Part shown: positions 4,995 to 50,935 of the stretch, piece after piece | How positions within the stretch are numbered: position 1 is the first letter of the stretch | Layout: every line of letters starts with the position of its first letter | Virus record (IMG/VR): IMGVR_UViG_3300005537_000001 | Location: 124,001 to 188,000 of that record | Direction: 5' to 3' (one strand) | DNA: 64,000 nucleotides | Translations under genes and position numbers: made by a program | Notes under the pieces: model-generated | Seen by the model: the letters and a program-made list of their open reading frames with translations, nothing else | What the model was told of the DNA's origin: nothing | The model's database searches: none

Positions 4995-5279
4995 ATGAAA
5001 GTTTTCGAAATTTTGAGAAATGATACACCTGCCGTAACTGAACAGCAAATCATAGATCGTTTGAAATCTTTCGATTGGAAGTATGAATTTTCCGAGGACG
5101 CGCGCCGCGTCGAAAAGGGTAACAGGGAGCTCGAGGTCCTTGAGAACATGGTTTACAGTCTTTGGAAAACTAGCCCTGAAAAAGCGGTCAAGATATGGAA
5201 TGAAAATGCTCCCGGGTTTAAAGGTCATACAACCGTAGTTCCATCATTTCTCTTTAGACTCCAGCAGCAGGAAAAGTAA
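4995..5279 (+). CDS. Probable virion internal protein (MKVFEIL N-terminus)
   Basis: Late-type ATAAATA upstream; capsid-targeting-like N-terminus. Confidence 0.6.
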   Translation: MKVFEILRNDTPAVTEQQIIDRLKSFDWKYEFSEDARRVEKGNRELEVLENMVYSLWKTSPEKAVKIWNENAPGFKGHTTVVPSFLFRLQQQEK

Positions 5280-5370
5280 TGTCGATATTACTACAGCCGG
5301 ATGTAATATTGCTGCTGGTTGTTGTGATGCTGGGCGCGGCAGCCATATCGCTAATGACCACGCGAAAGTA

Positions 5371-5964
5371 ATGTTCTTCTATCGCTACAAGCCGCGCAGC
5401 ACGCATCTTCACAAATTTGAAGCTGAGATGCACAAGCGCTATCTGTCAAAACGGTGTAAGCTGGTTAGATGCATCACGCCTACGCTACACGTTTTCAAAT
5501 TTTTCGATCGCAATGATCGAGATTGGATCTACTGTGCGATCAACCCAATCATCGCAAAAACATTCAAGCCAAAGCGTACCCTCAAGGCAAATCCAGCTAT
5601 CTACGGTTTTTGTTCACTTACAAAGATCCCAAGATGGGTAGCGCACGAAGTGTCAATGCTGTACGTAAATCCCGATGCACGCGGCAAAGGCATCAGTAGC
5701 TTTATCTACGACACGGTTCTCAAGGACAAGATCATTTTGGTTTCCGGAGAGCTGCAAAACATACGCGCCAGAGCCATCTGGATTAAGCTGGTTAAGAATG
5801 AAAGCTACACGGTGTGGGCACAGGATCTCATGGACCTCTCGCGCAAGGATATTGTCTACATCGAAAATGATGAACTGAGTTGTAGCTTGAAGCTCTACAA
5901 CGATCTCAAGATGAAGCGCCGCAAGAAGAAGGAAGACATTCGACTGATTGCGGTGATCAAGTGA
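5371..5964 (+). CDS. GNAT-fold acetyltransferase-like protein
   Basis: LYVNPDARGKGISS acetyl-CoA motif A. Confidence 0.7.
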   Translation: MFFYRYKPRSTHLHKFEAEMHKRYLSKRCKLVRCITPTLHVFKFFDRNDRDWIYCAINPIIAKTFKPKRTLKANPAIYGFCSLTKIPRWVAHEVSMLYVNPDARGKGISSFIYDTVLKDKIILVSGELQNIRARAIWIKLVKNESYTVWAQDLMDLSRKDIVYIENDELSCSLKLYNDLKMKRRKKKEDIRLIAVIK

Positions 5965-6254
5965 TCAGATGCCCACTGTGCCTTCGCGAGCTTGGAACGA
6001 TAAACGTTGACTCCCATCACCTTATCCCTAAAGCCTTTAAGGGAAAGGAACTGGTAGATCTTCACAAAATCTGTCACCGTAAGATTCACGCTACGTTTAG
6101 CGAAAGAGAGCTGCTTCACTACTATCACACGATAGATCGACTGCTTGAAAGCGAGCACATTCAGAAATTCGTTAAGTGGGTAGCAAAGAAGCATCCAAGC
6201 TTCTACGACAGCAGCGATGAAACTGCTTCCCGTAAGGGTAAGCGTCGCCGGTAG
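5961..6254 (+). CDS. Small HNH endonuclease
   Basis: CPLC...HHLIPK...LHKICHRKIH. Confidence 0.8.
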   Translation: MIRCPLCLRELGTINVDSHHLIPKAFKGKELVDLHKICHRKIHATFSERELLHYYHTIDRLLESEHIQKFVKWVAKKHPSFYDSSDETASRKGKRRR

Positions 6255-6266
6255 TATAAATACCAG

Positions 6267-14243: not shown

Positions 14244-15344
14244 ATGAAACTACACGAGATACATAAGGCTAAAACAGAGGTTTCAGCTGAGCAGCGCAAG
14301 CTGTACAATGCTATCGTCAAAGCGATAGCCAAGACGGTTAAGATGGCAAATTCAAACGCTCTCGGTCAAGCTGGTCCAACCGACATAAATCCAGAATACC
14401 TAACCCGAATTGGCAATGGTCTAAAGGCGGCAGCTCTCGGTGGTAAGGATGATTTCGAGAAGGATTGGTCGAAGCTTGCTAGTAGGCACACAGATTTATT
14501 TGCTCATCTCGCTGATGAAATTTTCTCAGAATTAGGTGTAGACACATACGATGAGATGATGACTAAGCTTAAGCAGCTTAAAGAGGCAGATGAGACCGAC
14601 GTTGACGCACCAGAAGCTAAGGATGATGAGCTTGAGGCTGATAAGAACGCAGCCGAAGCAACCCCCTCCCCACAGGAGGACGTCGGTTCTGTCTCTCAAG
14701 CCGAAGGTTTCAAGAAATCCAAGAAGGAGATGTTTGCTTTTGGAGCAACTCGACCAGTAACACTTCTTACCAAAGACGAGAAAATCGGCGGCATGGACAT
14801 TACGCTTCAATACGTTATCAACCCAAAGACCGGAGCGTGGAGCTTGCGAGCCGCGCTGCAGGGACAGAGCGCCGAAGATATGGTTGAGTTTGAAACTGGA
14901 GAGGATCCAACCTCACTCATCAAGAATCTTAAGAAAAAGAAAAAGATTACTCCTCACCAGCTTGTAGACAACCTTAATCCACCTGCCGATAAAATCGGTG
15001 CCAAGAAGCCACCAGCTCCAGTTCCAACATCAACTCCAGAAAAACCAGAAGATGACGAGGAAGAATCAATTGATGAGGCTGTCAAGTCCAAGTTGTCCAA
15101 GGATATGATTTCGAAGGAGCTTCGTCGTGGTATCATGATGGCATGGAACGCTATTGGTCATGATCTCCTCGACGCGCTTGGTGAAGATGCAGACAATGAA
15201 TTGATTATGGATTCGGTTGCGACCACTGACATGATGCATTCCTATGGATCACCAGAAGCGTCAAAGGAACTTCGTAAACTATTTGACGATTACGGAGTGG
15301 CGGCCGTTCATAAGCTTCTTTCTAAAGAAATTCACCTCAACTAA
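14244..15344 (+). CDS. Probable virion internal (poly)protein
   Basis: MKLHEI N-terminus; internal LKE/IDE sites; acidic linkers. Confidence 0.7.
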   Translation: MKLHEIHKAKTEVSAEQRKLYNAIVKAIAKTVKMANSNALGQAGPTDINPEYLTRIGNGLKAAALGGKDDFEKDWSKLASRHTDLFAHLADEIFSELGVDTYDEMMTKLKQLKEADETDVDAPEAKDDELEADKNAAEATPSPQEDVGSVSQAEGFKKSKKEMFAFGATRPVTLLTKDEKIGGMDITLQYVINPKTGAWSLRAALQGQSAEDMVEFETGEDPTSLIKNLKKKKKITPHQLVDNLNPPADKIGAKKPPAPVPTSTPEKPEDDEEESIDEAVKSKLSKDMISKELRRGIMMAWNAIGHDLLDALGEDADNELIMDSVATTDMMHSYGSPEASKELRKLFDDYGVAAVHKLLSKEIHLN

Positions 15345-15360
15345 CCTGTGAAAAATAACT

Positions 15361-15450: not shown

Positions 15451-15497
15451 GTTTCGCGCTGAGCAGTCAGCGATAACCTAACTGAGGATTATTTTTA

Positions 15498-15897: not shown

Positions 15898-15968
15898 GTG
15901 GCTGTAGCATAAAGGTAATGCCTCACGCTGTGACCGTGACCAAGCCGGGTCAGTACCGGTCAGTCACC
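15898..15968 (+). tRNA. tRNA-His(GTG), atypical T loop, no encoded CCA
   Basis: TCACG-CT GTG AC-CGTGA. Confidence 0.7.
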
Positions 15969-15984
15969 CCTCTGGATTTTCTAT

Positions 15985-16061
15985 GGTGTTTATGGTGTAG
16001 TGGTCTTGCATCCAAGGTTGTGATCCTTGTGGTGAGGGTTCGATCCCCTCTAAACACCCCA
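15985..16061 (+). tRNA. tRNA-His(GTG) with G-1
   Basis: CAAGG-TT GTG AT-CCTTG; CCA. Confidence 0.9.
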
Positions 16062-16067
16062 ATTTTA

Positions 16068-16141
16068 GCCCGCTTAGGATAGTGGTAGTCTGACTGTTTC
16101 GTAAGCAGTAGGCCGGTGTTCGATTCACCGCGTGGGCACCA
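16068..16141 (+). tRNA. tRNA-Thr(CGT)
   Basis: ACTGT-TT CGT AA-GCAGT; CCA. Confidence 0.85.
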
Positions 16142-16144
16142 AGT

Positions 16145-16240
16145 TTGAGTGTAATGGCGACTTATCTTGGTTCGATTCCAAGTTTAGAATGGTTCTGTGA
16201 CGACGGTCAAGTCGAAGGGTTCGATTCCCTCTCCACTCAA
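16145..16240 (+). ncRNA. tRNA-like RNA with two T-loop hairpins
   Basis: TTGAGTG/CACTCAA closing stem; CTTGG-TTCGATT-CCAAG and AGGG-TTCGATT-CCCT; CGACTT/AAGTCG. Confidence 0.5.
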
Positions 16241-16249
16241 TTCACGTTT

Positions 16250-16324
16250 GAACCGTTCGATTTCTGGTGAGATCACCAGCCTTTCAAGCTGGCCAGATGG
16301 GATCGTTCCCCATACGGTTCGCCA
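16250..16324 (+). tRNA. tRNA-Glu(TTC)
   Basis: CCAGC-CT TTC AA-GCTGG; CCA. Confidence 0.9.
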
Positions 16325-16328
16325 ATTT

Positions 16329-16416
16329 CAGGAATTAGCTCATTGGAGATACGAGAGAGCACTCGGTTGCCGAAAGCACCGAGAGGTTGTTGGTTCGATT
16401 CCAACATTCCTGACCA
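16329..16416 (+). ncRNA. tRNA-Pro-like body with anticodon loop replaced by an extended CGAAA-capped hairpin
   Basis: CAGGAAT/ATTCCTG-A-CCA; CTCGG-T-TGC-CGAAA-GCA-CCGAG. Confidence 0.65.
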
Positions 16417-16422
16417 AATTAC

Positions 16423-16497
16423 GGGTTGTTAGCTCAGAGGCAGAGCATCCGGTTCTTACCCGGACGGTCGAGATTTCAAAATTCTCACAACCCACCA
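16423..16497 (+). tRNA. tRNA-Lys(CTT)
   Basis: TCCGG-TT CTT AC-CCGGA; CCA. Confidence 0.9.
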
Positions 16498-16501
16498 ATA
16501 T

Positions 16502-16572
16502 TCCCTTGTAGCTTAAACAAAGCCCGGCATTTACGGCCGGAGATGGAGGTGAAAGACCTTCCCAGGGAGCCA
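16502..16572 (+). ncRNA. tRNA-like RNA with loop ATTTACG (nominal UUA anticodon, non-canonical)
   Basis: TCCCTTG/CCAGGGA-G-CCA; CCGGC-ATTTACG-GCCGG; T arm GGAGG-TGAAAGA-CCTTC. Confidence 0.6.
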
Positions 16573-16577
16573 AATAT

Positions 16578-16648
16578 TCCCTGGTAGTTTAACTACTAGA
16601 ATAGCGCGTATACGCGTGGTGGAGGTGAAAGACCTTCCCAGGGAGCCA
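16578..16648 (+). ncRNA. tRNA-like RNA with 4-nt anticodon loop; 3' half identical to 16502-16572
   Basis: TCCCTGG/CCAGGGA-G-CCA; GCGCG-TATA-CGCGT. Confidence 0.6.
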
Positions 16649-16654
16649 AATTTT

Positions 16655-16730
16655 GGGATCGTAGCTCAGAGGCGAGAGCAGGGCCCTTTTAAGGCCAAGG
16701 TCGAGATTTCGAAATTCTCCGGTCCTACCA
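16655..16730 (+). tRNA. tRNA-Lys(TTT)
   Basis: GGCC-CT TTT AA-GGCC; CCA. Confidence 0.9.
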
Positions 16731-16737
16731 AACAAAT

Positions 16738-16863
16738 GGTGATGTAGTGTAATGGCAGCACGCGAAAACATCGATCGCAAATTTTGTTGTGACCCAACCG
16801 TCAGTGATTGGTTATCCACTCATAAAGGCGAAGATTACGTTCGAATCGTAACAATCACCACCA
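16738..16863 (+). ncRNA. tRNA/Y-RNA hybrid (circularly permuted YrlA-like) ending in CCA
   Basis: GGTGAT/ATCACC-A-CCA, D arm, TTACG-TTCGAAT-CGTAA T arm; anticodon arm replaced by ATCGATCGC-AAAT-TTTGTTG...CAACCGTCA-GTGATTGGT-TATC. Confidence 0.65.
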
Positions 16864-16870
16864 AACAAAT

Positions 16871-16946
16871 GCCGCTTAAGCTAATCTAGTGAAAGCGTGG
16901 GCCTGAAGAGCCCGATAGCTCGGAGCGTAACCGAGAGGCGGCACCA
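16871..16946 (+). tRNA. tRNA-Phe(GAA)
   Basis: TGGGC-CT GAA GA-GCCCG; CCA. Confidence 0.85.
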
Positions 16947-16954
16947 AATTTTAT

Positions 16955-17030
16955 TCCGGGTTAGCTCAGCGGTAGTAGCCCCTCGCTGTTAACGAGGTTG
17001 TCGGGAGTTCGATCCTCTCACCCGGAGCCA
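16955..17030 (+). tRNA. tRNA-Asn(GTT)
   Basis: CCTCG-CT GTT AA-CGAGG; CCA. Confidence 0.9.
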
Positions 17031-17037
17031 ATTCAAC

Positions 17038-17111
17038 GGTCCCTTGGTATATGGGTATTACACTGCGCTGTCTACGCGGTAAAGCGAGTCCGAGTCTCGC
17101 AGGGATCGCCA
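17038..17111 (+). tRNA. tRNA-Asp(GTC)
   Basis: CTGCG-CT GTC TA-CGCGG; CCA. Confidence 0.9.
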
Positions 17112-17269
17112 CTATTAACGGATCTTACGTTGACCGCCAAACAGCGCGCATAACCAGCAATACGCTCGTCCAACCGCAAGCTGCTTCTTGCAGCCGGGGT
17201 TTTGACAATTAACACGTGGCTTCGGTTTATCCAACCCAAGGGCGCGACGGTTTGCTGCCCAATAAGCCA

Positions 17270-17935
17270 TTACGAAACAACAGTCGCGTAAAATGCAAGC
17301 GCCGCTTCTAGCGTAGCAAATACCATCGTTGAATCTACTTGAGCGGCAGTTCTTGCTGGATTCAAGTAAGAAATCAAATATGATACGGTGGTTACGGTTG
17401 GAGACGCTTGAGCCATTGACACCGACGTTACGACTCCCTTACCGACGCCAAACGTGGCAGCTTGTACAACGAATACGTTGGCGGTAGGAAGGAACGTGTA
17501 GAGAACGGTATTGGATTCTGTGAATACGATTGGATCAGTTCCAATGATAATGGCTCCACCGCTACCAGTTCCAGCCATCGTCACTAGCCAGCTTGAGTTA
17601 CCATTAACGGTGCCGTTGACTACGAAGATAAAGATGCCAAGCTTAACTTGAGCTGCAACATGGTTGTCAAAGTCAACCGCGCGGGTAAGAACCCAGCTAG
17701 CTGAAACTGAACCAGGATTGGTGACAACGTAGACACCATTTTGAGTAGGATCAAGCTGGTTGGTTAGGAGAATGCGATCATTCGCGCTTGCCGCGAATCC
17801 ATCAACAACCAGCGCCGTTTGCGTGGATGAGGTTAGGGTAGCTCCAACACCAAGAGTGCCGTTAGCGTATGTACCTGCAAGGTTGACTGGTGATGCCGCG
17901 TGAGCAGAATCTAGAGTGCCGGTTACTGTCAACAT
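17270..17935 (-). CDS. Tail-fibre-associated structural protein, antisense within the tRNA array
   Basis: RILLTNQLDPTQNGVY..WVLTRA domain shared with 43610-48169; AGGAG SD and ATAAATA late promoter on minus strand. Confidence 0.8.
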   Translation of the reverse strand: MLTVTGTLDSAHAASPVNLAGTYANGTLGVGATLTSSTQTALVVDGFAASANDRILLTNQLDPTQNGVYVVTNPGSVSASWVLTRAVDFDNHVAAQVKLGIFIFVVNGTVNGNSSWLVTMAGTGSGGAIIIGTDPIVFTESNTVLYTFLPTANVFVVQAATFGVGKGVVTSVSMAQASPTVTTVSYLISYLNPARTAAQVDSTMVFATLEAALAFYATVVS

Positions 17936-17975
17936 TTTATTCTCCTAAATTCGTTTAAAGACAATTCTTATTTAT

Positions 17976-18050
17976 GCTCCATTAGACTTCTGGTGAGGTT
18001 ACCGCTCTCTCAAAGCGGATAGGTGGGATCGTAACCCACATGGAGCGCCA
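17976..18050 (+). tRNA. tRNA-Glu(CTC)
   Basis: CCGCT-CT CTC AA-AGCGG; CCA. Confidence 0.9.
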
Positions 18051-18056
18051 CCAAAT

Positions 18057-18137
18057 TTGACAACCGACTCGCGACCGAGGGTTATCCATCCAAGATAAAC
18101 ATCCTCAACCGCAATGCCGCAAGGCCTTTGTTGTCAA
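18057..18137 (+). ncRNA. Y-RNA-like small RNA
   Basis: TTGACAAC-C-GA / TT-GTTGTCAA bulged-C terminal helix; GGTTATCC motif. Confidence 0.55.
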
Positions 18138-18146
18138 TTAGATTAT

Positions 18147-18220
18147 ACCACCATAGTTCAATGGTAGAACGTCTGGCCGATTACCGGAATACGCGGGTCC
18201 GATTCCTGCTGGTGGTACCA
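18147..18220 (+). tRNA. tRNA-Ile(GAT), C33
   Basis: TCTGG-CC GAT TA-CCGGA; CCA. Confidence 0.8.
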
Positions 18221-18225
18221 AATTT

Positions 18226-18310
18226 TAGGATATTGCGTGAGACTGCCACGGTATGCTGCAACCTCGTAAGAGGCATCGCTCGCTAGGTTCGACTCCTAGG
18301 TATCCTATCA
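18226..18310 (+). ncRNA. tRNA-Cys-like RNA with a hairpin inserted in the anticodon arm
   Basis: TAGGATA/TATCCTA; CT GCA AC followed by CCTC-GTAA-GAGG; CTAGG-TTCGACT-CCTAG. Confidence 0.5.
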
Positions 18311-18314
18311 AATT

Positions 18315-18386
18315 CGTGGCGTGGCAGAACGGTCATGCACCGGTTTCATAAGCCGTCCCAAGCAGGTTCAACTCCTGCCGCCACGA
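18315..18386 (+). tRNA. tRNA with CAT anticodon (Met or Ile2)
   Basis: CGTGGCG/CGCCACG; TT CAT AA loop. Confidence 0.8.
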
Positions 18387-18426
18387 CACAAAGTGGATTT
18401 TCTATAAGTAGAGATAAGGAGGACAA

Positions 18427-19218
18427 ATGTTCTATTATCTCTACAAAATCACGAATAACGTGAATGGAAAAATCTACGTCGGGTATCATAAAACCTCTAA
18501 CATAGATGATGGTTACATGGGATCCGGGAAGATTATCAAGCACGCAATTAAAAAGCACGGCTTAGATAACTTTACAAAAGTCATACTTGAGTATTTTGAG
18601 AATGCAGAAGCTATGTATGCGCGAGAGAAAGAAATTGTAGATGATGATTTTCTAGCTCGACCCGATGTCTATAACCTAAGACGCGGAGGAAACGGTGGGT
18701 TTGATCATATCAATAAAAATCGAACCGCCGAGGAATGGTCTCGATTAGGAAAATTGAGACGAGCAAAATCTAAAGGAAACACAGGTAAAATATTTAGTGT
18801 TGAATGGAAAGCTAATATTAGCAAATCGTTAAAAGGTAGTGATAATTCAGCAGCAGTTGAAGCGGCCAGATCCAAAAAATCTAACCATAAACGAAAACTT
18901 ACGATGAGAAAACGTAAGCATCAACAAGGTGAAAATAATTCCAATTTTGGAAAAATTTGGATAACTGATGGAATAAAAGCTGTCAAAATTAGAAAAGATC
19001 AGATACATGAATATCTTGAACGTGGATATATGTTGGGTAGAACAATTAAAATTCCAAAAATAAAACACATTACTAAAGCTGAACTCTACAATGATATTCA
19101 ACCTAAATGCAGAAATCCAAAATGTAATAACAGCTTGTCGCTTATGCAATTTGTCAAAAATATCAAATCGTGTTGTAAAGCATGCGCTAATTCAACACGT
19201 TATTCGGGGATCGTCTAA
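18427..19218 (+). mobile_element. GIY-YIG homing endonuclease (Seg-like) inserted in the tRNA array
   Basis: YLYKITNNVNGKIYVG..GYMGSG..YNL; AT-rich; stop overlaps tRNA-Gln. Confidence 0.9.
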
Positions 19219-19278
19219 CTGGCAGGACATTGAGCTTTGAACTCAGAAATCTTGGATCGTACCCAAGTCCCCGAACCA
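19204..19278 (+). tRNA. tRNA-Gln(TTG)
   Basis: TTGAG-CT TTG AA-CTCAG; CCA. Confidence 0.9.
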
Positions 19279-19285
19279 AATTATC

Positions 19286-19379
19286 GCCGAGGTAGCTCAG
19301 AGCTGGTCAAAACCCAGCGCCGGTAGAGCGGGTGCCCAACAGCACCGCGTCGTTGGTTCGAATCCAACCCGAGGCGCCA
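19286..19379 (+). ncRNA. tRNA-like RNA: D-loop hairpin insert, 6-nt anticodon loop, GA/GA mismatches in acceptor stem
   Basis: GCCGAGG/CCGAGGC-G-CCA; GCTGG..CCAGC insert; GGTGC-CCAACA-GCACC. Confidence 0.65.
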
Positions 19380-19386
19380 AGTTTAT

Positions 19387-19462
19387 TCACCGATAGTTTA
19401 ACTGGCAAAACCTTCGTCTCTGAAACGAAAGAGTCCTGGTTCGATCCCAGGTCGGTGATCCA
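19387..19462 (+). tRNA. tRNA-Gln(CTG)
   Basis: TTCGT-CT CTG AA-ACGAA; CCA. Confidence 0.9.
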
Positions 19463-19468
19463 AATTAT

Positions 19469-19544
19469 GCCCTCGTAGCCTAAAGGATAGGTGCTACGCT
19501 TCGAACGTAGAAAGATGCGGGTTCGAGTCCTGCCGAGGGTACCA
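19469..19544 (+). tRNA. tRNA-Arg(TCG)
   Basis: CTACG-CT TCG AA-CGTAG; CCA. Confidence 0.9.
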
Positions 19545-19551
19545 CCAAAAT

Positions 19552-19651
19552 GCCGAAGTAGCTTAGAGTGGTGCGCAAAATAAATCCACGTCGGTAGAGC
19601 GTCCACCCGGAAACGTGGAAGACGATGGTTCGAATCCATTCTGAGGCACCA
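19552..19651 (+). ncRNA. tRNA-like RNA paralogous to 19286-19379 (D-loop insert, 8-nt anticodon loop)
   Basis: GCCGAAG/CTGAGGC-A-CCA; GTGG..CCAC insert; TCCAC-CCGGAAAC-GTGGA. Confidence 0.65.
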
Positions 19652-19655
19652 ATTT

Positions 19656-19731
19656 CTCCCTATAGTGAAGCTGGATATCACGAGGTCGTGCGAAGGCCTA
19701 AGCAGAGGTTCGACTCCTCTTAGGGAGGCCA
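19656..19731 (+). tRNA. tRNA-Arg(GCG)
   Basis: AGGTC-GT GCG AA-GGCCT; CCA. Confidence 0.85.
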
Positions 19732-19750
19732 CATTCAAGTAAATAGCTGC

Positions 19751-20263
19751 ATGAAAGCATACGAACTATTCGAGGATACAAGAATATACTGGCACGCCAG
19801 CCAAAGCGATCTGCCCCTTGGTAAGGTGATAGCGTGGAAGGCTAAGCAGAAGCACCACTTTGGTGATTATGAGAAACTTCTGGAATACTTCCGTCCAGCT
19901 GGAGCTTTAAGCAGATTGACATCTTTCTTTCTTGCAAATACGCGCCAAGGTGCTGAGCAATTTGGTAGAGGGAATACCTATAAGGTTCAAGCCGTTGGTA
20001 AAACAAGCTCCCACTACATTGGCTGGATAGGTCTTCTTACTGGATTGCCCATGATGGTTGGGTATAAATCCGGGCACGGATACACGGTGAAAGTTTCTAG
20101 GGAGCTTTCAAATCCAGATGTCAAATACATCTGTGAGCAATATTGGTCTGGCAAGAAGCCATCGACAAAAGATTTCAAGCGATTTGATGAAGAGCCAGAT
20201 GGTGAGAGCTTCATTCAAGAAACTCTTGCGCCAAAGATAATCTGTCTCAAACATTTTGAATAA
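19751..20263 (+). CDS. Probable virion protein with ADP-ribosyltransferase-like (Arr/DUF2441-like) fold
   Basis: MKAYELFE start; YWHAS..L..G, LEYFRP...SRLTSFF, YW, distal E. Confidence 0.5.
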   Translation: MKAYELFEDTRIYWHASQSDLPLGKVIAWKAKQKHHFGDYEKLLEYFRPAGALSRLTSFFLANTRQGAEQFGRGNTYKVQAVGKTSSHYIGWIGLLTGLPMMVGYKSGHGYTVKVSRELSNPDVKYICEQYWSGKKPSTKDFKRFDEEPDGESFIQETLAPKIICLKHFE

Positions 20264-20264
20264 C

Positions 20265-20338
20265 GTCCCGTTCGTCCAATGATAAGACGACAAGTTGCAA
20301 CCTTGTAGACGCTGGTTTGATTCCGGCACGGGACTCCA
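20265..20338 (+). tRNA. tRNA-Cys(GCA)
   Basis: ACAAG-TT GCA AC-CTTGT; T73-CCA. Confidence 0.9.
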
Positions 20339-20344
20339 AATTAT

Positions 20345-20422
20345 TGGCACTTAGCGTTCAGGGTGAGTGCGCCGCACTGTTAATGCGGAACGAGACTGGT
20401 TCGATCCCAGTAGTGCCAGCCA
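20345..20422 (+). tRNA. tRNA-Asn(GTT), second copy
   Basis: CCGCA-CT GTT AA-TGCGG; CCA. Confidence 0.9.
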
Positions 20423-20429
20423 AATTAAT

Positions 20430-20506
20430 ATGGGTGTGTCAGGTAATTGGCTAACCGGCTGCGCTCCAAACGCTTCGATGGGGTTCGAATCCCTCCACCC
20501 ATGCCA
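20430..20506 (+). tRNA. tRNA-Trp(CCA) with only 3 canonical anticodon-stem pairs
   Basis: ATGGGTG/CACCCAT-G-CCA; CTGCG-CT CCA AA-CGCTT. Confidence 0.75.
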
Positions 20507-20542
20507 AATATCTCTAAATAACTCATCGACCTGGAGTACGCT

Positions 20543-21205
20543 ATGAAGATTTACGAGTTACTAGAAGCAAGTGATCCTAATTCACCGTCTAATCAGCTGC
20601 GCAAGTTGAAAGGTAACAAGGATGAACTCATCAAGCACATTCTTACTAAAGTTAAGGATGGTCGCTACGATTATGCTAAAAAGGTTGTAGCGCTCGCTAG
20701 AGACAAAGGAATAGATTATCCCGAATTTGATTCTGTTGAGAAGAGCATAGGTAGAGGCGTAGCAGGAAATGCAACCCATGAACCAAGCTACAATGAAAAG
20801 AGCAGATCACTTCAGGGTAGAGTAAAAGATTGGCACAAGCTTATGGGCGTCAGCGATAAAGATGTCGCCACCGCGCACCGTGAAATCAGCAGTTCGAAGC
20901 AGTATTTGGATCTCATACACGCGGGAATGACGGATATATCCACCCCACAGCAAAAGAAGAATGGCACCTTCAACTTTAGCGTTAAAGACGAACCGGGTTC
21001 ATATCAAGTGTATGGCAACGGTCAGCTCCGTCACATGAAGCCGTTAATGGGGTATGGTGGATATGGTCGACTAAAACATCAGCTGGTAGCTTCGCTTAGA
21101 CCAACTATTATCGCGGGTGATCCGGTAAAATCGCTGCTCAAAACATACGAGGCGGCGATGGAAAAGATGCTCGCCTACTTCAAGCGCGCAAGATCGCCAA
21201 AATAA
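20543..21205 (+). CDS. Probable virion internal protein (paralog of 28564-29238)
   Basis: MKIYELLEA; shared GDPVKS..KTY and GxDxPEF..I/VxKS motifs. Confidence 0.75.
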   Translation: MKIYELLEASDPNSPSNQLRKLKGNKDELIKHILTKVKDGRYDYAKKVVALARDKGIDYPEFDSVEKSIGRGVAGNATHEPSYNEKSRSLQGRVKDWHKLMGVSDKDVATAHREISSSKQYLDLIHAGMTDISTPQQKKNGTFNFSVKDEPGSYQVYGNGQLRHMKPLMGYGGYGRLKHQLVASLRPTIIAGDPVKSLLKTYEAAMEKMLAYFKRARSPK

Positions 21206-21209
21206 TTTT

Positions 21210-21282
21210 GCCCTCGCCGGTGGATACGGCCACAGGTCTTCTAAACCAGTAGGTGGAGGTTCGATTCCTCTCGAGGGCGCCA
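21210..21282 (+). tRNA. tRNA-Arg(TCT), reduced D arm
   Basis: GCCCTCG/CGAGGGC; CT TCT AA; CCA. Confidence 0.8.
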
Positions 21283-21287
21283 TTTAA

Positions 21288-21362
21288 GCCGTTGTCGTAT
21301 ATTGGTAATACAGATCCTTGGTAAGGATCAAAACGAGTGTTCGATTCACTCCTGCGGCACCA
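21288..21362 (+). tRNA. tRNA-Thr(GGT)
   Basis: GATCC-TT GGT AA-GGATC; CCA. Confidence 0.9.
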
Positions 21363-21381
21363 ACAAGTAAATAAAAGTACT

Positions 21382-21804
21382 ATGAAAATACTTCTACATC
21401 CAGATCCAACTCTTAGCAAGATAAGCCATCCAATCGAAGAGATTAATGACGGCACTATCGAGCTAATCAACAACATGTTCATTACCATGAACGAAGCTGG
21501 TGGTATCGGTCTGTCGGCAATTCAGGTAGGTGTTGACAAGCAGCTGTTCATCATGAGCATCAACGGTGCCAGCTACATCTTCATCAATCCGGTTATCACG
21601 TGGAGATCTCCAGAAACTCAAACGATCAACGAAGGCTGTCTCAGTCTTCCAGGTACGTTCGTCGACATGACCCGCAGCGCTAAGATTATAGTGAACGCGT
21701 TTGGGGTTGACGGTAAGATATTTGAGGTTGAAGCAACCGGTCTCCACGCCGCGTGCATTCAGCATGAAATGGATCATCTAAGCGGAAAGACGCTGCTCTC
21801 CTAA
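21382..21804 (+). CDS. def: Peptide deformylase
   Basis: GIGLSAIQVG, EGCLS, QHEMDH. Confidence 0.95.
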   Translation: MKILLHPDPTLSKISHPIEEINDGTIELINNMFITMNEAGGIGLSAIQVGVDKQLFIMSINGASYIFINPVITWRSPETQTINEGCLSLPGTFVDMTRSAKIIVNAFGVDGKIFEVEATGLHAACIQHEMDHLSGKTLLS

Positions 21805-21869
21805 TTCAGTGGTAGAATGCCTGCATGACACGCAGGATGTGGTAGGTCCGATTCCTACGGAGAGCACCA
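21795..21869 (+). tRNA. tRNA-Val(GAC), overlapping the def stop codon
   Basis: CCTGC-AT GAC AC-GCAGG; CCA. Confidence 0.85.
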
Positions 21870-21926
21870 ACATCGTGGTCTAGCGATAAATACTATCCTA
21901 GACCATTTTCATTGCGTGGGATTTGA

Positions 21927-22118
21927 ATGAAAGTAGCAGAATTACTTGAACGCGATTATGTTTCGGATGTGTGGAGCGCCAAACCACTTAAGCTCCTTAA
22001 CAGGTACAGCAAGAAGGATTTGAGCAAGGCGCTCAGTAGAAAGCCGTCAGCGCAGACGGTAGTGATAAGAAACACCGCCACCGGTGACATCGTTGGCAAG
22101 CGAACTATCATACAATGA
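21927..22118 (+). CDS. Small probable virion internal protein
   Basis: MKVAELLE; late-type ATAAATA upstream. Confidence 0.6.
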   Translation: MKVAELLERDYVSDVWSAKPLKLLNRYSKKDLSKALSRKPSAQTVVIRNTATGDIVGKRTIIQ

Positions 22119-22456
22119 AACTTCAAGATTTATTCGAGTCAAAATACGCATCGGTTCCTCTATCACAGATACAACCGACAGAAGATTGGCAGGTACCTAT
22201 TGATGATAGGCTTTTAGCATATGTCGATGGTGAAAAGAATACCGTGCCGCGAATTTATGATGACATCAAAAATGGTATTGGAATAAAGCATGCTCTGGAA
22301 GTTTCTAGGATAGCAGATACTTCTAAGAGCTGGAAAAAGACATTTCCACCGAAGCCTGGAAAGGTATATTATTTGCATAATGGCCACCACAGATATGCGG
22401 CGGCTGTTTTAGCAAAATTGAAAAATGTTAGGGTTAGAATAGGAAAAGGAGCATAA
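22115..22456 (+). CDS. ParB/Srx-like domain protein with capsid-targeting-like N-terminus
   Basis: MKLQDLFE; YLHNGHHRYAAA. Confidence 0.7.
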   Translation: MKLQDLFESKYASVPLSQIQPTEDWQVPIDDRLLAYVDGEKNTVPRIYDDIKNGIGIKHALEVSRIADTSKSWKKTFPPKPGKVYYLHNGHHRYAAAVLAKLKNVRVRIGKGA

Positions 22457-22457
22457 G

Positions 22458-23120
22458 ATGAAGCGCATTATAGAAATTAAATCTGCCGAAGGCGGCACAG
22501 ATAGCAAGCTCTTCGCGCAAGATCTTGCCAACGCATACGTAAAGTATCTCACCCGAGTCGGCTGACTCCACCGCCGCATCGATTCGCTGACAATCGAGGT
22601 TGATGGACAGGATCTCTCAGCGCTTCACCAAGAAGCTGGTGGTCATCGAATCCAGCGGGTTCCACCAACCGAACGTTCTGGTCGCACCCACACCTCTACC
22701 GTTACCGTCGCCATCATCAACCCGCAAGAAGCTAAGCTGATTGAGTTCAACGAACGTGACTTCAGGATAGAGTGGTACTCTGGTACCGGTTCTGGTGGAC
22801 AACACCGTAACAAGCACCAAAATTCTTGCCGAATATTTCATACCCCAACTGGGACGGTTGCCACCGCACAATGTAGGAGCCGAGAAAATTCCTTGAAGGA
22901 AGCGAAGGTAAATATCCTTGAACGTCTAAACGCTCAGCTCTCCGGAGCAGCCCATCAAGCACTATCAATGGATAGGAAAACTCAGATGGGTTCCGGAGAG
23001 CGGGGTGACAAGATCCGCACCTACCGCTTCCAAGACAATATCGTCAAGGATCACAACACCGGAAAGCAGGCGCAAACCGACAAGGTGATGGCTGGAAACT
23101 TTCAACTGCTTTGGAGATAA
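22458..23120 (+). CDS. RF1-type peptide chain release factor (lacking domain 1) with in-frame TGA at codon 36
   Basis: MKRIIEIKSAEGGTDSKLFAQDL..Y..RVG*LH...EAGGHRIQRVPPTE.SGRTHTS...GSGGQHRNK...GSGERGDKIRTY; PxT and GGQ motifs; TGA 22563-22565. Confidence 0.9.
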
Positions 23121-25092: not shown

Positions 25093-25100
25093 TATCGCAT

Positions 25101-31718: not shown

Positions 31719-31758
31719 GCCGTCGCTAGCAACGATAGCCGCTATAGGAGATCATATC

Positions 31759-39379: not shown

Positions 39380-39392
39380 CCCAGGTTGACAG

Positions 39393-48169: not shown

Positions 48170-48196
48170 TAGAAATCTCCGACATGTTTAGCATAT

Positions 48197-48574
48197 TTAG
48201 CGTAATGTGGGCTTTGGATTGTCGTAATCGTCTATCTTGTAGAACAGGCTTGTTTCTACCTCGGTGCTTGCAACCATGTCTTCCCATCTGTCAGGAAGAC
48301 CGTTGATAAACATGTTGATGATTTTGGTGTTATCTTCCAAGGCGCAAATTTCATGCTCCTTGGTAGAATCAAAATCATCAAACAGCTCTCCTGCCCGCGC
48401 TATTTTTTGCCAGTCGCGGCCATAGACGCATACCGAACCCTTGAGCACGACAATGTTGTGAAAGTGCTGCTCAATCTTGTGGGCATGCATTCTAATTCCA
48501 GAACCCTTTTGCATGAAGGTGTAGATGGGTCCACAGATGATACCCGATTTGTAGAAATCTATCTTGATGCGCAT
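48197..48574 (-). CDS. Cupin-fold protein in the tail-fibre operon
   Basis: MHAH...H..VVLKGSV...HEICALEDNT. Confidence 0.7.
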   Translation of the reverse strand: MRIKIDFYKSGIICGPIYTFMQKGSGIRMHAHKIEQHFHNIVVLKGSVCVYGRDWQKIARAGELFDDFDSTKEHEICALEDNTKIINMFINGLPDRWEDMVASTEVETSLFYKIDDYDNPKPTLR

Positions 48575-49983
48575 TATGTGTATCTGATAACGATGTGTCC
48601 AACCGTACCATCAGCTGGGTCGGTAGACAGAGATCTGCCATCTCCACCTGGATTGCCGGTACCATTGGTTCCTACGATAGCTGCTCCACCAGCTCCAGGA
48701 ATGCAGATAGATCCGGCGGTGCCTGAATTACCAACTAAGTTTGCGAGGGTGCCACCAGTTCCAACCGCGCCCGCCGCGCCCGCCGTTCCACCATGACCAG
48801 CTCCTGGTGAATTACCGCCAGCACCGCCAGGAGGTCCAGTCATCGTTGTAAATCCTGTAAAAGTTCCAGCTGTAACGCTTGACTGCAATCCAGCTCCACC
48901 CACCGTGCACGATAGCGTGTGGCCGTTCTGCGCTGAAACAGAGTAGGATGATCGCGAGTACCCACCAGAACCTCCACCTCCACCAGCATCAGAGGTGCAT
49001 ATGTTGGTAGAACTGCCGCTACCGCCGGTAGCGCCACCTCCCCACACCTCGATGACCATAGTTGTCGCACCGCTTGGGATAGTTTGGGTTGTGGTTCCAG
49101 CCGCGCTAAGGGTAACGGTTGATGGCGTGAACGGTACGGTTGTGTTTGTTACGCTCCACGTAACCGTGTTTGACGTCGCGCTGGTGTGACCATCAGATAC
49201 AACGCAGTGCATCGTGCCGGAAGTAACGCCACCGTTATCTGCTGCCGTCGCTGTTACGGCTGTAGCTGCTGAGCTTGGCGCGGTTAGGGTACCAGAACCA
49301 GATAAAATTGACCATGAGAATGAATAGGTTCCAGTTCCATTAGCTCCAGCTACCGTAGTTGAAGATGTTGTTCCAGAACCAGATGGCGCGCCTAGCGCGC
49401 CAGAAACCGACACGTTACCAGGCTGGGTACCAATAGTTGTCGCAATGTACGTGTTTGTAATCGTCCAGCTTGCTGAATTTGTGTTGGTCGTACTATTTCC
49501 ATCCGACACGGCACACGTGATGGTTCCGCTCAATGATGAGTTTGCACCAGGTGCCGCCGAAACGCTGGCGACGGTAGACGTTGTGGATCCATTCGTCGTG
49601 TTGGTATTCAGCGTTCCACCAGCCCCGGTTATTGACCAGGTGTAGGTGTAGCCGCTTTGCTTACCCTTTGATCCGACGGTGCTGGTGGTATTAGTTGTTT
49701 GCGACGCGCTTGCTGGCTGTGAGCTTGAAACCGAAATGTTTGAAATACCGGCGGCAACAACGTTAGTCGAACCTATAGTTGCAAATCTTGAGGCAATGTC
49801 GGAGCCACCCTGATCAAATCCAATTCCGCCTGCAGCTGAACCAGAACCGGCCGCGGCGAAGATTGCATTTAGATCGCTGTTTCCAGCCGTAAATCCAGTT
49901 GCGGCGGCTTGAGGCCACCCGGCGATGAGCGGCGCTAGAAGCGAAGCTAAATCTGTACCTGCATGGCGAAAATTGCTTGTCAT
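48574..49983 (-). CDS. Gly-rich tail/receptor-binding accessory protein
   Basis: Ig-like YTWS repeats; IEVWGGGA..GGGGGSGGY glycine-rich domain. Confidence 0.75.
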   Translation of the reverse strand: MTSNFRHAGTDLASLLAPLIAGWPQAAATGFTAGNSDLNAIFAAAGSGSAAGGIGFDQGGSDIASRFATIGSTNVVAAGISNISVSSSQPASASQTTNTTSTVGSKGKQSGYTYTWSITGAGGTLNTNTTNGSTTSTVASVSAAPGANSSLSGTITCAVSDGNSTTNTNSASWTITNTYIATTIGTQPGNVSVSGALGAPSGSGTTSSTTVAGANGTGTYSFSWSILSGSGTLTAPSSAATAVTATAADNGGVTSGTMHCVVSDGHTSATSNTVTWSVTNTTVPFTPSTVTLSAAGTTTQTIPSGATTMVIEVWGGGATGGSGSSTNICTSDAGGGGGSGGYSRSSYSVSAQNGHTLSCTVGGAGLQSSVTAGTFTGFTTMTGPPGGAGGNSPGAGHGGTAGAAGAVGTGGTLANLVGNSGTAGSICIPGAGGAAIVGTNGTGNPGGDGRSLSTDPADGTVGHIVIRYT

Positions 49984-50059
49984 CAGCTGTTACCCATATA
50001 AAGATGAAATATTTATCACAGATTGAATGATTTGGACGCTTAGCTGCATAAATAGGTTC

Positions 50060-50935
50060 ATGATATCATTCAAGCAATTTTTGACAGAAGGTGCGCCTAA
50101 AGCGCACAGGTACAGCAGCCGACGCGCTACGGCGGAAGATATCATCAGAGCCCTCGAATTTGTGTCCAAAGCTGTTAGCGTTCCGGTAACCACCCTTAAA
50201 GGCGATCTGATCGGATCCGCACGACTAGCTCTGGTCGGCAAGAAACAAGATGCTGGTGATATTGACATCGCCTTTAAACCAGCTGATTCGGCTGATGCTG
50301 AGATGGTCAACGGCAAGATGCTTAAGGCCGTTAAAGGAAGAGGCGCGTTTAACGCTGGTACGAAGGTAGGATCCTATTCGGTACCAATCAAGGGCGGATT
50401 CATTCAAGTTGACTTGATGTTCGTCAGCAACAAAAAGTGGGCGAAGTGGATGTACCACTCATCCCACGAATCCAAATATCCTGGAGCCGTTCGCAACATC
50501 ATTCTATTCACGGCGCTGGCGCACTCACAGGAAAAAGATAAGGATTTCGTCATTCGAGACAATGGTAAGCCAATCATCCGAGCGTCGAAGTCAGTTAAGA
50601 TGGATTCTGGCATGGAACGTCTCTTCAAGATGGCAAAGTTCAACAAGAAAGCTGGAACGTATAACAAGAGCCTTGAGAAGGTTGATCCTAAGGCGATTGA
50701 AGCGCATCTTCGCGACATCGGTCAGGAAATTAAATTCTCCCACGAATCAGATTTAACCGACAACCCCGATCACGTTGCCGCCCACATCTTCGGTCACGGA
50801 GTTACGGCAAAAGATCTGATGACGGCAGAAGATGTCATCAACCGAATACATCAGCTACCAAACGCTAAAGAGATCATTCAGGCCTCAAGATCAGAACTTA
50901 AACGACTTAAGCTACCAATACCTGCTGAGCTTTAA
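50060..50935 (+). CDS. Pol-beta-like nucleotidyltransferase with capsid-targeting sequence
   Basis: MISFKQFLTEG; IGSA...GDIDIA, IQVDLMF. Confidence 0.7.
   Translation: MISFKQFLTEGAPKAHRYSSRRATAEDIIRALEFVSKAVSVPVTTLKGDLIGSARLALVGKKQDAGDIDIAFKPADSADAEMVNGKMLKAVKGRGAFNAGTKVGSYSVPIKGGFIQVDLMFVSNKKWAKWMYHSSHESKYPGAVRNIILFTALAHSQEKDKDFVIRDNGKPIIRASKSVKMDSGMERLFKMAKFNKKAGTYNKSLEKVDPKAIEAHLRDIGQEIKFSHESDLTDNPDHVAAHIFGHGVTAKDLMTAEDVINRIHQLPNAKEIIQASRSELKRLKLPIPAEL

What the first reader, a model, noticed from the sequence alone, without database searches (positions are those of the whole stretch)
4995..50935. Dispersed family of late genes with T4-like capsid-targeting N-termini carrying enzymatic cargo
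MKVFEIL, MKLHEI, MKAYELFE, MKIYELLE, MKVAELLE, MKLQDLFE, MKLSDLYE, MKLLEI, MKLNEL, MKVNELLE and MISFKQFLTE start many genes, several behind (T)ATAAATA-type late promoters. Established: T4 internal proteins carry a ~10-aa CTS cleaved after Glu by the prohead protease and are injected with the DNA. Inference: this phage packages an arsenal (ART-like 19751, ParB-like 22115, GNAT 25540, NUDIX 26425, nucleotidyltransferase 50060) that acts at the moment of infection, e.g. as anti-defence factors.
Basis: partly seen in the sequence, partly recalled or inferred. Interest (0 to 1): 0.6.

Follow-up and report, generated by a model that had tools for sequence, protein, structure and literature searches.

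The report
Capsid-targeting leader family in jumbo phage
An uncultured 368 kb T4-related jumbo phage puts the same short N-terminal tag (MKxxELxE) on about 20 otherwise unrelated proteins, several of them enzymes; the tag closely resembles the T4 signal that loads proteins into the capsid for injection, but packaging and cleavage have not been shown.

Summary
Window genes 4995, 19751, 20543, 21927, 22115, 25540, 27835 and 28564 start with M-K-x-x-(E/D)-(L/I)-x-E.

- **Statistics:** genome-wide the full motif occurs 8 times against 0.21 expected. A PSSM finds 18 of 550 gene starts against 2 of 1,919 internal Met.
- **T4-type machinery:** the genome is a complete 368 kb phage with a T4 gp21-type prohead protease, a gp23-type capsid protein and a gp55-like late sigma factor.
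- **Head module:** a variant of the same leader (MLV(C/R)ELLE) heads genes that flank the protease and capsid genes.
- **T4 comparison:** real T4 sequences are similar (IPII/III MKTYQEFIAE, gp24 MAKINELLRE).
- **Modularity:** the leader is absent from the only homolog of the ParB-like cargo. It persists where the adjacent domain was swapped. In a GNAT family from 10 other metagenomes it always ends at an invariant Glu.
- **Virion evidence:** one cluster member has a homolog that is an MS-confirmed PA5oct virion protein.

The CTS reading is therefore well supported but indirect. Cargo calls are mixed: GNAT, the NTase signature and ParB-like hold up (the last weakly), the NUDIX domain is solid but its leader is at background, and ART-like is unsupported. 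The anti-defence role is untested. The genes are clustered in a tRNA island rather than dispersed.

The parts
4995..5279 (+). 94-aa gene starting MKVFEILRND. Leader core present, but no Glu at position 8.
   Evidence: LOO-PSSM 11.0. ATAAATA at 4960-4966, 28 nt upstream, followed by an AGGAG Shine-Dalgarno. Weak phrog_16661 hit, E 1.6e-4.
14244..15344 (+). 366-aa acidic protein starting MKLHEIHK. Doubtful member.
   Evidence: LOO-PSSM 1.4, at the background level seen for about 1% of internal Met. No promoter box within 100 nt. No Pfam or PHROG hit.
15898..25200 (+). tRNA island in which leader genes 19751, 20543, 21927 and 22115 are embedded. It also holds a GIY-YIG homing endonuclease at 18427-19218.
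   Evidence: ARAGORN finds 20 tRNAs here. Rfam adds tRNA-like hits at 16871-16943, 19286-19376, 19552-19648 and 25101-25200. GIY-YIG by Pfam.
19751..20263 (+). 170-aa ORFan, MKAYELFE|D, predicted mature pI 9.2.
   Evidence: LOO-PSSM 15.1. GTAAATA 5 nt upstream. No homologs. No Pfam or PDB sequence hit. Atlas structure neighbours are unknown viral, TA-system and DUF2441 families at TM 0.63-0.71 and Arr at only 0.44. AF2 single-sequence model pLDDT 36.
20543..21205 (+). 220-aa protein, MKIYELLE|A, with one copy of the 45-aa repeat at 20615-20749. Predicted mature pI 9.7.
   Evidence: LOO-PSSM 15.4 and CTAAATA 22 nt upstream. Repeat defined by HMM. Ortholog P0113 is 57% identical and starts MKVYELLES.
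21927..22118 (+). 63-aa basic protein, MKVAELLE|R, predicted mature pI 10.5.
   Evidence: LOO-PSSM 15.9. ATAAATA at 21886-21892, 34 nt upstream.
22115..22456 (+). 113-aa ParB/Srx-like protein, MKLQDLFE|S. Its start overlaps the upstream stop (ATGA).
   Evidence: PHROG ParB-like E 6e-4. DUF1015 E 0.012. An NGHHRYAAA motif is visible in the sequence. Its only homolog, P0172 (61% identity), begins directly at the conserved body, and its frame opens only 5 codons upstream, so the leader is an add-on.
25540..26109 (+). 189-aa GNAT-family acetyltransferase, MKLSDLYE|M.
   Evidence: Own Pfam hits are sub-threshold (21.5 and 19.1 bits), but 8 of 11 family members hit PF00583, best E 1.8e-6. All 10 homologs carry a leader ending at an invariant Glu before a conserved M-A/P-x-R-G-G.
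26425..26871 (+). 148-aa NUDIX hydrolase starting MKLLEIAMPLE. Domain solid, leader doubtful.
   Evidence: PF00293 42.5 bits and phrog_1185 E 2.7e-15. LOO-PSSM 1.4 and no hydrophobic-x-Glu at position 8.
27835..28560 (+). 241-aa protein starting MKLNELMD. Intermediate leader, with Asp instead of Glu at position 8.
   Evidence: LOO-PSSM 7.4. ATAAATA at 27790-27796, 38 nt upstream. No family hit.
28564..29238 (+). 224-aa protein, MKVNELLE|A, with the 45-aa repeat at 28861-28995. Paralog of 20543.
   Evidence: LOO-PSSM 15.9. Repeat and paralogy shown.
50060..50935 (+). 291-aa protein starting MISFKQFLTE|G with a Pol-beta nucleotidyltransferase signature (G-S...D-x-D).
   Evidence: Sequence. Atlas feature hits at 0.96-0.98 to viral clusters, one with NTP_transf_2 in 33% of members. 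No Pfam or PHROG hit. ATAAATA at 50048-50054, 5 nt upstream. The N-terminus resembles T4 IPIII MKTYQEFIAE.
53100..53594 (+). 164-aa protein with the 45-aa repeat at 53430-53567 and an atypical N-terminus, MYLDAVIE|S.
   Evidence: Repeat HMM hit E 1.3e-18. It does not match the leader PSSM.

Best explanation
The 8-10-residue leader M-(K/L)-x-x-(E/D)-(L/I)-(L/F/Y)-E is a T4-type capsid targeting sequence (propeptide).

Proposed mechanism:
1. Late in infection, a gp55-type sigma factor drives transcription from ATAAATA boxes.
2. The tagged proteins associate through the leader with the scaffolding core of the prohead.
3. The gp21-family prohead protease removes the leader after the Glu of the hydrophobic-x-Glu motif.
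4. The mostly basic mature proteins stay in the DNA-filled head and enter the host with the DNA.

The tag is portable. In this phage and in related uncultured jumbo phages it is fused to unrelated bodies. These include GNAT acetyltransferases, a ParB/Srx-like protein, a Pol-beta-type nucleotidyltransferase, a P-loop NTPase with a zinc finger, and a large family built from a new 45-aa repeat.

Shown: the motif and its statistics, the T4-type head machinery, the modularity of the tag, and its conservation across genomes. Inferred: core binding, cleavage, packaging, injection, and any role early in infection.
For: 1. T4-type head machinery is present. Peptidase_S77 scores 83 bits, Gp23 314 bits, and the gp55 homolog has E 1.7e-7.
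2. The leader is strongly over-represented and is selected at the peptide level.
3. The same leader heads genes in the head module, in the order portal, MLVCELLE protein, protease, MLIQDLL protein..., MLVRELLE protein..., capsid protein..., MLVRELLQE GNAT, MLTRELLSE protein. This parallels T4 genes 20-67-68-21-22-23.
4. Real T4 propeptides are alike in length, composition and the terminal hydrophobic-x-Glu: IPII/III MKTYQEFIAE, IPI MKTFKEF..., gp24 MAKINELLRE, gp22 MLKEQLIAE.
5. The capsid protein has ...HLQE before TAAAG at the position expected for gp23-type cleavage.
6. The leader is modular. The ParB-like homolog lacks it and has no room for it upstream. g188357 and its ortholog share 71% identity in the C-terminal 367 aa and have unalignable N-domains, yet both keep the leader.
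7. In the GNAT family, leaders of varying length always end at an invariant Glu before the conserved body.
8. Among 144 database proteins with the 45-aa repeat, 23 start with the strict leader against 24 of 2,705 internal Met (p = 1.5e-18). With the broad pattern the counts are 50 against 65 (p = 2e-37).
9. ATAAATA occurs 66 times against 14 expected on the coding strand. It precedes 7 of 28 leader genes against 50 of 522 others (p = 0.018). Only 1 of 28 leader genes has TATAAT.
10. PA5oct gp205, a homolog of cluster member g191713, is an ESI-MS/MS virion protein and starts MKLFEVF (PMC7318152).
11. Predicted mature proteins are mostly basic, pI 9-10.5.
12. The T4 CTS concept and the diversity of T-even internal proteins are established (PMC5694885, PMC3012670).
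Against: - There are no proteomic, N-terminal or structural data for this uncultured phage.
- The nearest isolates, XacN1 and RsoM2USA, have 0 and 2 pattern hits and lack the leader in their head modules. PA5oct has 1 hit. The tag is therefore not a conserved feature of the wider clade.
- Several members lack Glu at position 8 (4995, 27835).
- The residue after the Glu is Ala or Ser in only 6 of 10 strong cases, whereas in T4 it is nearly always Ala or Ser.
- Only a quarter of leader genes have an exact ATAAATA box within 70 nt.
- Twenty or more packaged species is far above T4's handful.
- The complex prediction of protease with a leader protein could not be run.
Confidence: 0.62

Rival explanations
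1. The leader is an uncleaved N-terminal amphipathic helix that gives these proteins a common partner or location other than the capsid interior. Examples would be oligomerisation, a host or phage hub protein, or the membrane. Its resemblance to the T4 CTS would then be convergent.
For: AF2 models residues 3-10 of g331615 as a helix. The leader is absent from the head modules of the nearest isolates. Some members lack the terminal Glu.
Against: The same leader heads genes inside the head module, next to the protease. The invariant Glu boundary and variable leader length in the GNAT family fit a processing site better than a folded element. A homolog of one member is a virion protein.
Confidence: 0.15
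2. The pattern reflects selection on the mRNA or on early codons. A-rich second codons and an unstructured 5' coding region would boost translation of late messages that have weak Shine-Dalgarno sites. It would not be a peptide signal.
For: Many leader genes lack an obvious SD. Lys is the commonest second residue genome-wide. Some ATAAATA boxes lie only 4-5 nt from the ATG, which suggests near-leaderless mRNAs.
Against: Positions 5-8 are conserved as amino acids with free synonymous and Leu-family codon variation. The hydrophobic positions and the terminal Glu are kept across orthologs at 35-57% identity. The ML variant has no AAA/AAG second codon.
Confidence: 0.07
3. The shared N-terminus is only a trace of common ancestry. 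The genes would have arisen by duplication and recombination at a shared 5' end, as in hypervariable loci, with no present function for the leader.
For: Several members are paralogs that share the 45-aa repeat. The genes are clustered.
Against: Nucleotide sequences of the leaders have diverged while the peptide pattern is kept. The leader sits on bodies with unrelated folds: GNAT, ParB-like, NTase, P-loop NTPase. It is conserved in distant metagenomic phages.
Confidence: 0.08

Closest known systems
T4 capsid targeting sequence on internal proteins IPI, IPII, IPIII, Alt and gp24 (Mullaney and Black 1996; reviewed in PMC5694885 and PMC3012670)
   Same: A short N-terminal tag of about 8-10 residues shared by otherwise unrelated proteins. 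It has the composition M-K-x-aromatic/aliphatic-x-E-hydrophobic-hydrophobic-x-E and ends in hydrophobic-x-Glu. The phage has a gp21-family protease and a gp23-family shell, and uses late-type promoters. The genes lie beside a tRNA cluster with a GIY-YIG endonuclease, a NUDIX gene and an RNA ligase, as do ipI-III in T4.
   Different: There are about 18-28 tagged genes instead of about 5. Two leader flavours exist: MK... in the accessory clusters and MLV... in the head module. Cargo includes GNAT, ParB-like, NTase and NTPase domains and a new repeat family. No experimental proof of packaging or cleavage exists. The host phage is a 368 kb jumbo phage whose capsid protein is 61% identical to that of RsoM2USA.
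Ejection and inner-body proteins of phiKZ-like giant phages (SPN3US, phiKZ) processed by a gp21-like prohead protease (PMC5694885, PMC10052503)
   Same: Many head-internal proteins, some of them enzymes, are cleaved after Glu by a T4-like protease and ejected into the cell.
   Different: Their propeptides are mostly longer than 100 residues and are not a common short tag (PMC5694885). There is no sequence relationship to the proteins here.
PA5oct virion proteome (93 virion-associated gene products including enzymes; PMC7318152)
   Same: PA5oct is a related gp23-type jumbo phage (capsid protein 42.6% identical). Its gp205 is homologous to cluster member g191713, is found in virions and starts MKLFEVF.
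   Different: PA5oct does not show the 8-residue leader genome-wide: 1 pattern hit against 1 in the control. N-terminal processing was not analysed in the passages read.

Membership tests
T4-type CTS-tagged internal head proteins | A short (10-20 aa) N-terminal sequence shared by otherwise unrelated proteins | tested here: met
   8 full-motif starts against 0.21 expected. PSSM gives 18 of 550 starts against 2 of 1,919 internal Met. The bodies are GNAT, ParB-like, NTase, NTPase, repeat proteins and ORFans.
T4-type CTS-tagged internal head proteins | The tag ends in the (L/I)-x-Glu site recognised by the gp21-type protease | tested here: met
   The ten strongest leaders end L/I/F-x-E at residue 8. 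Glu is invariant at this boundary in the GNAT family. It is not met for 4995, 27835, 14244 and 26425. This is sequence evidence only; cleavage itself was not tested.
T4-type CTS-tagged internal head proteins | The genome encodes a gp21-family prohead protease and a gp23-family shell | tested here: met
   PF03420 83.2 bits at genome 353361-353777. PF07068 314 bits at 359023-360120.
T4-type CTS-tagged internal head proteins | Late expression from TATAAATA-type promoters read by a gp55 sigma factor | tested here: inconclusive
   A gp55 homolog is present, E 1.7e-7. ATAAATA is 4.7-fold over-represented on the coding strand and enriched before leader genes, p = 0.018. Only 7 of 28 have an exact box. 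No transcript data exist.
T4-type CTS-tagged internal head proteins | The protein is physically present in the mature head with the tag removed, and is injected with the DNA | not testable with these tools
   The phage is uncultured. The only proxy is PA5oct gp205, a virion protein by ESI-MS/MS (PMC7318152).
GNAT acetyltransferase (PF00583), window 25540 | Match to the GNAT profile, including the acetyl-CoA-binding motif A region | tested here: met
   Own score is 19.1 bits, below the 20.7 cut-off, but 8 of 11 family members match PF00583, best E 1.8e-6. The head-module paralog-by-function g362293 scores 24.1 bits, above the cut-off.
NUDIX hydrolase (PF00293), window 26425 | Match to the NUDIX profile above the gathering score | tested here: met
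   42.5 bits against a cut-off of 21.1. phrog_1185 E 2.7e-15. Its membership of the leader family is not supported (PSSM 1.4).
ParB/Srx-like domain, window 22115 | Profile match to the ParB N-terminal or sulfiredoxin-type domain with the GxxR/HHR motif | tested here: inconclusive
   PHROG ParB-like E 6e-4 to 7e-3. Pfam gives only DUF1015 at E 0.012. No PDB sequence hit. A GHHR motif is present.
ADP-ribosyltransferase, window 19751 | ART fold with an H-Y-E or R-S-E catalytic triad | tested here: not met
   No Pfam, PHROG or PDB sequence match. The Atlas structural match to Arr has TM of only 0.44, and better matches are to unannotated families. The AF2 model is unusable at pLDDT 36. The catalytic residues could not be placed.
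Pol-beta-type nucleotidyltransferase, window 50060 | The hG[GS]x9-13Dh[DE]h signature and a profile match | tested here: inconclusive
   The signature G-S...D-I-D is present. The Atlas neighbours include a cluster with NTP_transf_2 in 33% of members. There is no Pfam, PHROG or PDB hit.

The most novel reading that the evidence does not exclude
A whole group of uncultured T4-superfamily jumbo phages uses a portable 8-residue address tag to load dozens of different proteins into the capsid for co-injection. The load would include enzymes and a new, widespread 45-aa-repeat protein family with members up to 2,000 aa. tRNA islands would serve as the hot spots where such cargo genes are gained and exchanged behind late promoters.
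Probability: 0.4. Interest if true: 0.75.

Novelty: new variant of a known kind. Interest (0 to 1): 0.6.

Why it matters
If the tag works as in T4, it gives a sequence-only way to read out the injected proteome of uncultured jumbo phages. That is the set of proteins that act before any phage gene is expressed, and so it is a prime source of counter-defence and host-takeover factors. It would also show that the T4 CTS mechanism is much older and more widely used than the T-even internal proteins suggest. It defines a large uncharacterised repeat family (385 representative clusters) as probable head-internal proteins. It may also offer a compact packaging tag for engineering large-capsid phages.

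Tried and rejected
- **Close relatives:** megablast of 11 kb against phages found nothing. tblastn of 20543 and of the three-repeat protein against phages found nothing. IMG/VR scans with 28564 and 25540 returned only an identical 48.8 kb fragment.
- **19751:** the homolog search returned only itself. The AF2 single-sequence model was unusable at pLDDT 36. The PDB sequence search gave only chance antibody hits.
- **50060 and 22115:** the PDB sequence search found nothing useful.
- **Three-repeat model:** Foldseek against the PDB and BFVD gave no match at E ≤ 0.001.
- **45-aa repeat:** the profile is absent from XacN1 and RsoM2USA. Pfam has no model for the multi-repeat proteins.
- **Whole-record scans:** the metagenome contigs behind L017 and L019 are not held.
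- **PA5oct enrichment test:** planned but dropped, because PA5oct lacks the 8-residue pattern.
- **Ruled out:** chance occurrence and TAG recoding (TAG ends 91 of 550 genes).
- **Not used:** the read-mapping tools.

Full report
**What the window is.** The window is bases 124001-188000 of a complete 368,054 bp virus record with direct terminal repeats. The genome has a T4 gp21-family prohead protease (PF03420, 83 bits, genome 353361-353777). It has a gp23-family major capsid protein (PF07068, 314 bits) and a gp55-like late sigma factor (E 1.7e-7, 35% identity). By capsid protein, the nearest described phages are Ralstonia RsoM2USA (61%), Xanthomonas XacN1 (55%), Stenotrophomonas jumbo phages (50%) and PA5oct (43%). 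No close relative exists in the phage or IMG/VR collections apart from an identical 48.8 kb fragment. The window is an accessory region. It holds a tRNA island of 22-26 tRNAs and homing endonucleases. It also encodes an RNA ligase, an ATP-grasp protein, a ferritin-like protein, a 5'-nucleotidase, Ro60/TROVE and a PrkA-DUF444-SpoVR operon.

With a simple gene call of 550 genes, MKxx[ED][ILFM]xE starts 8 genes against 0.21 expected from positional residue frequencies. It occurs at none of 1,982 internal Met. A PSSM from the ten unambiguous leaders scores 6 bits or more at 18 of 550 starts against 2 of 1,919 internal Met. The back-translated pattern hits this genome 7 times, XacN1 0, RsoM2USA 2, PA5oct 1, and the reversed-pattern control 0-1. 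Codons vary freely among GAA/GAG and the six Leu codons, so the constraint is on the peptide.

- Eight are strong: 4995, 19751, 20543, 21927, 22115, 25540, 27835 and 28564.
- Two are at background: 14244 and the NUDIX gene 26425, both 1.4 bits.
- One, 50060 (MISFKQFLTE), is in a different register.

The genes are clustered rather than dispersed. 12 of 19 core hits lie between genome 129 and 192 kb (p = 8e-6).

**The leader also marks the head module.** The head module runs in this order:
- portal-like gene (350868)
- a 224-aa protein starting MLVCELLE (352539)
- protease (353295)
- a 258-aa charged protein starting MLIQDLLNISE (353914)
- MLVRELLE (356635)
- a scaffold-like protein (357960)
- capsid protein (358873)
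- MLVRELLQE (362293), a GNAT at 24.1 bits, above the cut-off
- MLTRELLSE (363805)

The order matches T4 genes 20-67-68-21-22-23. Real T4 sequences from the annotated record are IPII/IPIII MKTYQEFIAE, IPI MKTFKEFTS..., gp24 MAKINELLRE, gp22 MLKEQLIAE and gp68 MLLIPETHELVLE. These are the propeptides that the literature calls capsid targeting sequences. They are 10-20 residues long, bind the scaffolding core and are removed by gp21 (PMC5694885). T-even internal proteins are described as a diverse set of defence-countering proteins that share only the CTS (PMC3012670). The leader here has the same length and chemistry and the same terminal hydrophobic-x-Glu. The capsid protein has ...HLQE followed by TAAAG about 40 residues before the conserved GVQPM block, a plausible gp23-type maturation site. 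That last point is an inference.

**The leader is a module.**
- The ParB-like protein 22115 reads MKLQDLFE then SKYASVPLSQIQPTE. Its only homolog (61% identity) begins MRYKTVPLSQIQPTE, and its frame opens only five codons upstream. The eight residues are therefore an addition.
- The NTPase g188357 (MKLFDIFEAE) and its ortholog on a syntenic 316 kb wastewater contig (MKLQQLYEAK) are 71% identical over 367 C-terminal residues. Their N-terminal domains cannot be aligned, yet both keep the leader.
- The GNAT 25540 has ten homologs at 41-52% identity. Each has a leader of variable sequence and length, one with a 15-residue insertion. Every leader ends at an invariant Glu followed by a conserved M-A/P-x-R-G-G. 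This is the pattern expected of a propeptide boundary.

**A new repeat travels with the leader.** Ten proteins of this genome share a 45-aa unit with consensus ...DYPEFKxIEKS. They include window genes 20543, 28564 and 53100. A profile search of 1.84 billion representatives finds 385 proteins, some up to 2,070 aa with up to 13 repeats. Pfam has no model for it. Among these proteins, 23 of 144 start with the strict leader against 24 of 2,705 internal Met (p = 1.5e-18). With a broader pattern the counts are 50 of 144 against 65 of 2,705 (p = 2e-37). AF2 with 15 homologs gives pLDDT 81 for the three-repeat protein. Each unit is a beta-hairpin plus three helices, and the leader is a low-confidence N-terminal helix. 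Foldseek finds no significant match in the PDB or BFVD.

**Conserved genomic setting.** A third, independent 62 kb contig shows leader genes scattered through a tRNA array, several of them behind ATAAATA boxes. They are MKINELLNE, MRLFELKMTEE, the GNAT with MKLAELKE|M, and MLLNELHMSEE. In T4 the ip genes likewise flank the tRNA cluster with its GIY-YIG gene, nudE and an RNA-ligase-like gene.

**Promoters.** ATAAATA occurs 66 times on the + strand against 14.1 expected. Its reverse complement occurs 16 times against 12.8 expected. The box lies within 70 nt upstream of 7 of 28 leader genes against 50 of 522 others (p = 0.018). Near-matches (GTAAATA, CTAAATA) precede several more, and other leader genes overlap or abut an upstream leader gene. 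Only 1 of 28 leader genes has TATAAT. With the gp55 homolog, late expression is plausible but not shown.

**Nearest thing to experimental evidence.** The cluster member g191713 has homologs in PA5oct-type phages. PA5oct gp205 is annotated as a structural protein by ESI-MS/MS and starts MKLFEVF. The PA5oct study reports 93 virion-associated products, including enzymes unrelated to virion structure (PMC7318152). XacN1 virions also contain enzymes encoded near the capsid gene (PMC5852040). Neither study analysed N-terminal processing in the passages I read.

**Cargo.**
- GNAT is supported for the family.
- NUDIX is a solid domain, but its leader is at background.
- ParB-like rests on weak profile hits plus a GHHR motif.
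- The NTase call rests on a clear G-S...D-x-D signature and an Atlas lead.
- ART-like is not supported.
- Further tagged bodies lie outside the window. One is a P-loop NTPase with a phage zinc finger (g188357). Another is a weak amidoligase-like protein starting MRFTEFLIE (g4722).

**Verdict.** The CTS interpretation is the best explanation (about 0.6) but remains indirect. The early-infection or anti-defence role is an analogy only. The main points against are that the nearest isolates lack the leader, that some members have imperfect cleavage motifs, and that the implied number of packaged species is large. The kind of system is known from T4. What is new is its scale, its spread among uncultured jumbo phages, the enzymatic and repeat-protein cargo, and the tRNA-island setting.

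Noticed in passing
window 199-272 and 2682-2759: Two tRNA genes with a CUA (amber-suppressor) anticodon, confirmed as tRNA by Rfam at 56.5 and 49.2 bits. TAG is nevertheless an ordinary stop codon here, ending 91 of 550 genes, so there is no sign of recoding.
   Followed up: partly
genome 355023, 356905 and 364098 (L013); RsoM2USA L006:10420; PA5oct L031:5732: A second N-terminal motif, L-(R/K)-x-L-A-G-(I/L/M/V), heads three head-module genes: MENQRLKELAGL, MDISKLRKLAGM and MSNFNELRKLAGI. It recurs in RsoM2USA (MDITRLKHLAGV) and in the MS-confirmed PA5oct virion protein gp203 (MFNINDILRLAGV). It may be another head-assembly signal.
   Followed up: partly
window 20615-20749, 28861-28995, 53430-53567; genome 331 kb, 366 kb, 191-195 kb, 239 kb: An uncharacterised 45-aa repeat (beta-hairpin plus three helices, consensus ...DYPEFKxIEKS). 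It has 385 representative proteins in the 1.84-billion-protein library, no Pfam model and no structural match.
   Followed up: yes
window 19739-19745 and 50048-50054; genome starts 51718, 81222, 106309, 109783, 205340, 279838, 326470, 342631: In a subset of genes the (A/G)TAAATA box lies only 4-5 nt upstream of the ATG, against the usual 20-40 nt. If these are late promoters, the transcripts would be nearly leaderless.
   Followed up: no
window 31684-33393: A phage-encoded Ro60 ortholog (TROVE 112 bits plus Ro60 vWA 170 bits). No Y-RNA-like family reached the Rfam gathering score in the window.
   Followed up: partly
window 37421-43613: A complete PrkA (AAA plus kinase) - DUF444 (YeaH-like) - SpoVR (YcgB-like) operon on a phage genome, with very strong Pfam scores of 511, 349 and 447 bits.
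   Followed up: no
window 43610-48169 (-) and 48574-49983 (-): A 1,519-aa minus-strand ORF with no Pfam hit lies in the window's most GC-rich stretch (0.53). Next to it is a 469-aa glycine-rich-domain protein behind an ATAAATA-like box. They may be fibre or other structural genes.
   Followed up: no
window 16871-16943, 19286-19376, 19552-19648, 25101-25200: Four tRNA-like Rfam hits that ARAGORN did not call. Three are 91-100 nt long, which could mean introns or long variable arms.
   Followed up: no
window 10421-29238 compared with T4 65.4-74.4 kb (L027): The neighbourhood resembles T4's ip region. It has an RNA ligase, a tRNA cluster with an embedded GIY-YIG endonuclease, a NUDIX hydrolase and the leader-tagged genes.
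   Followed up: partly
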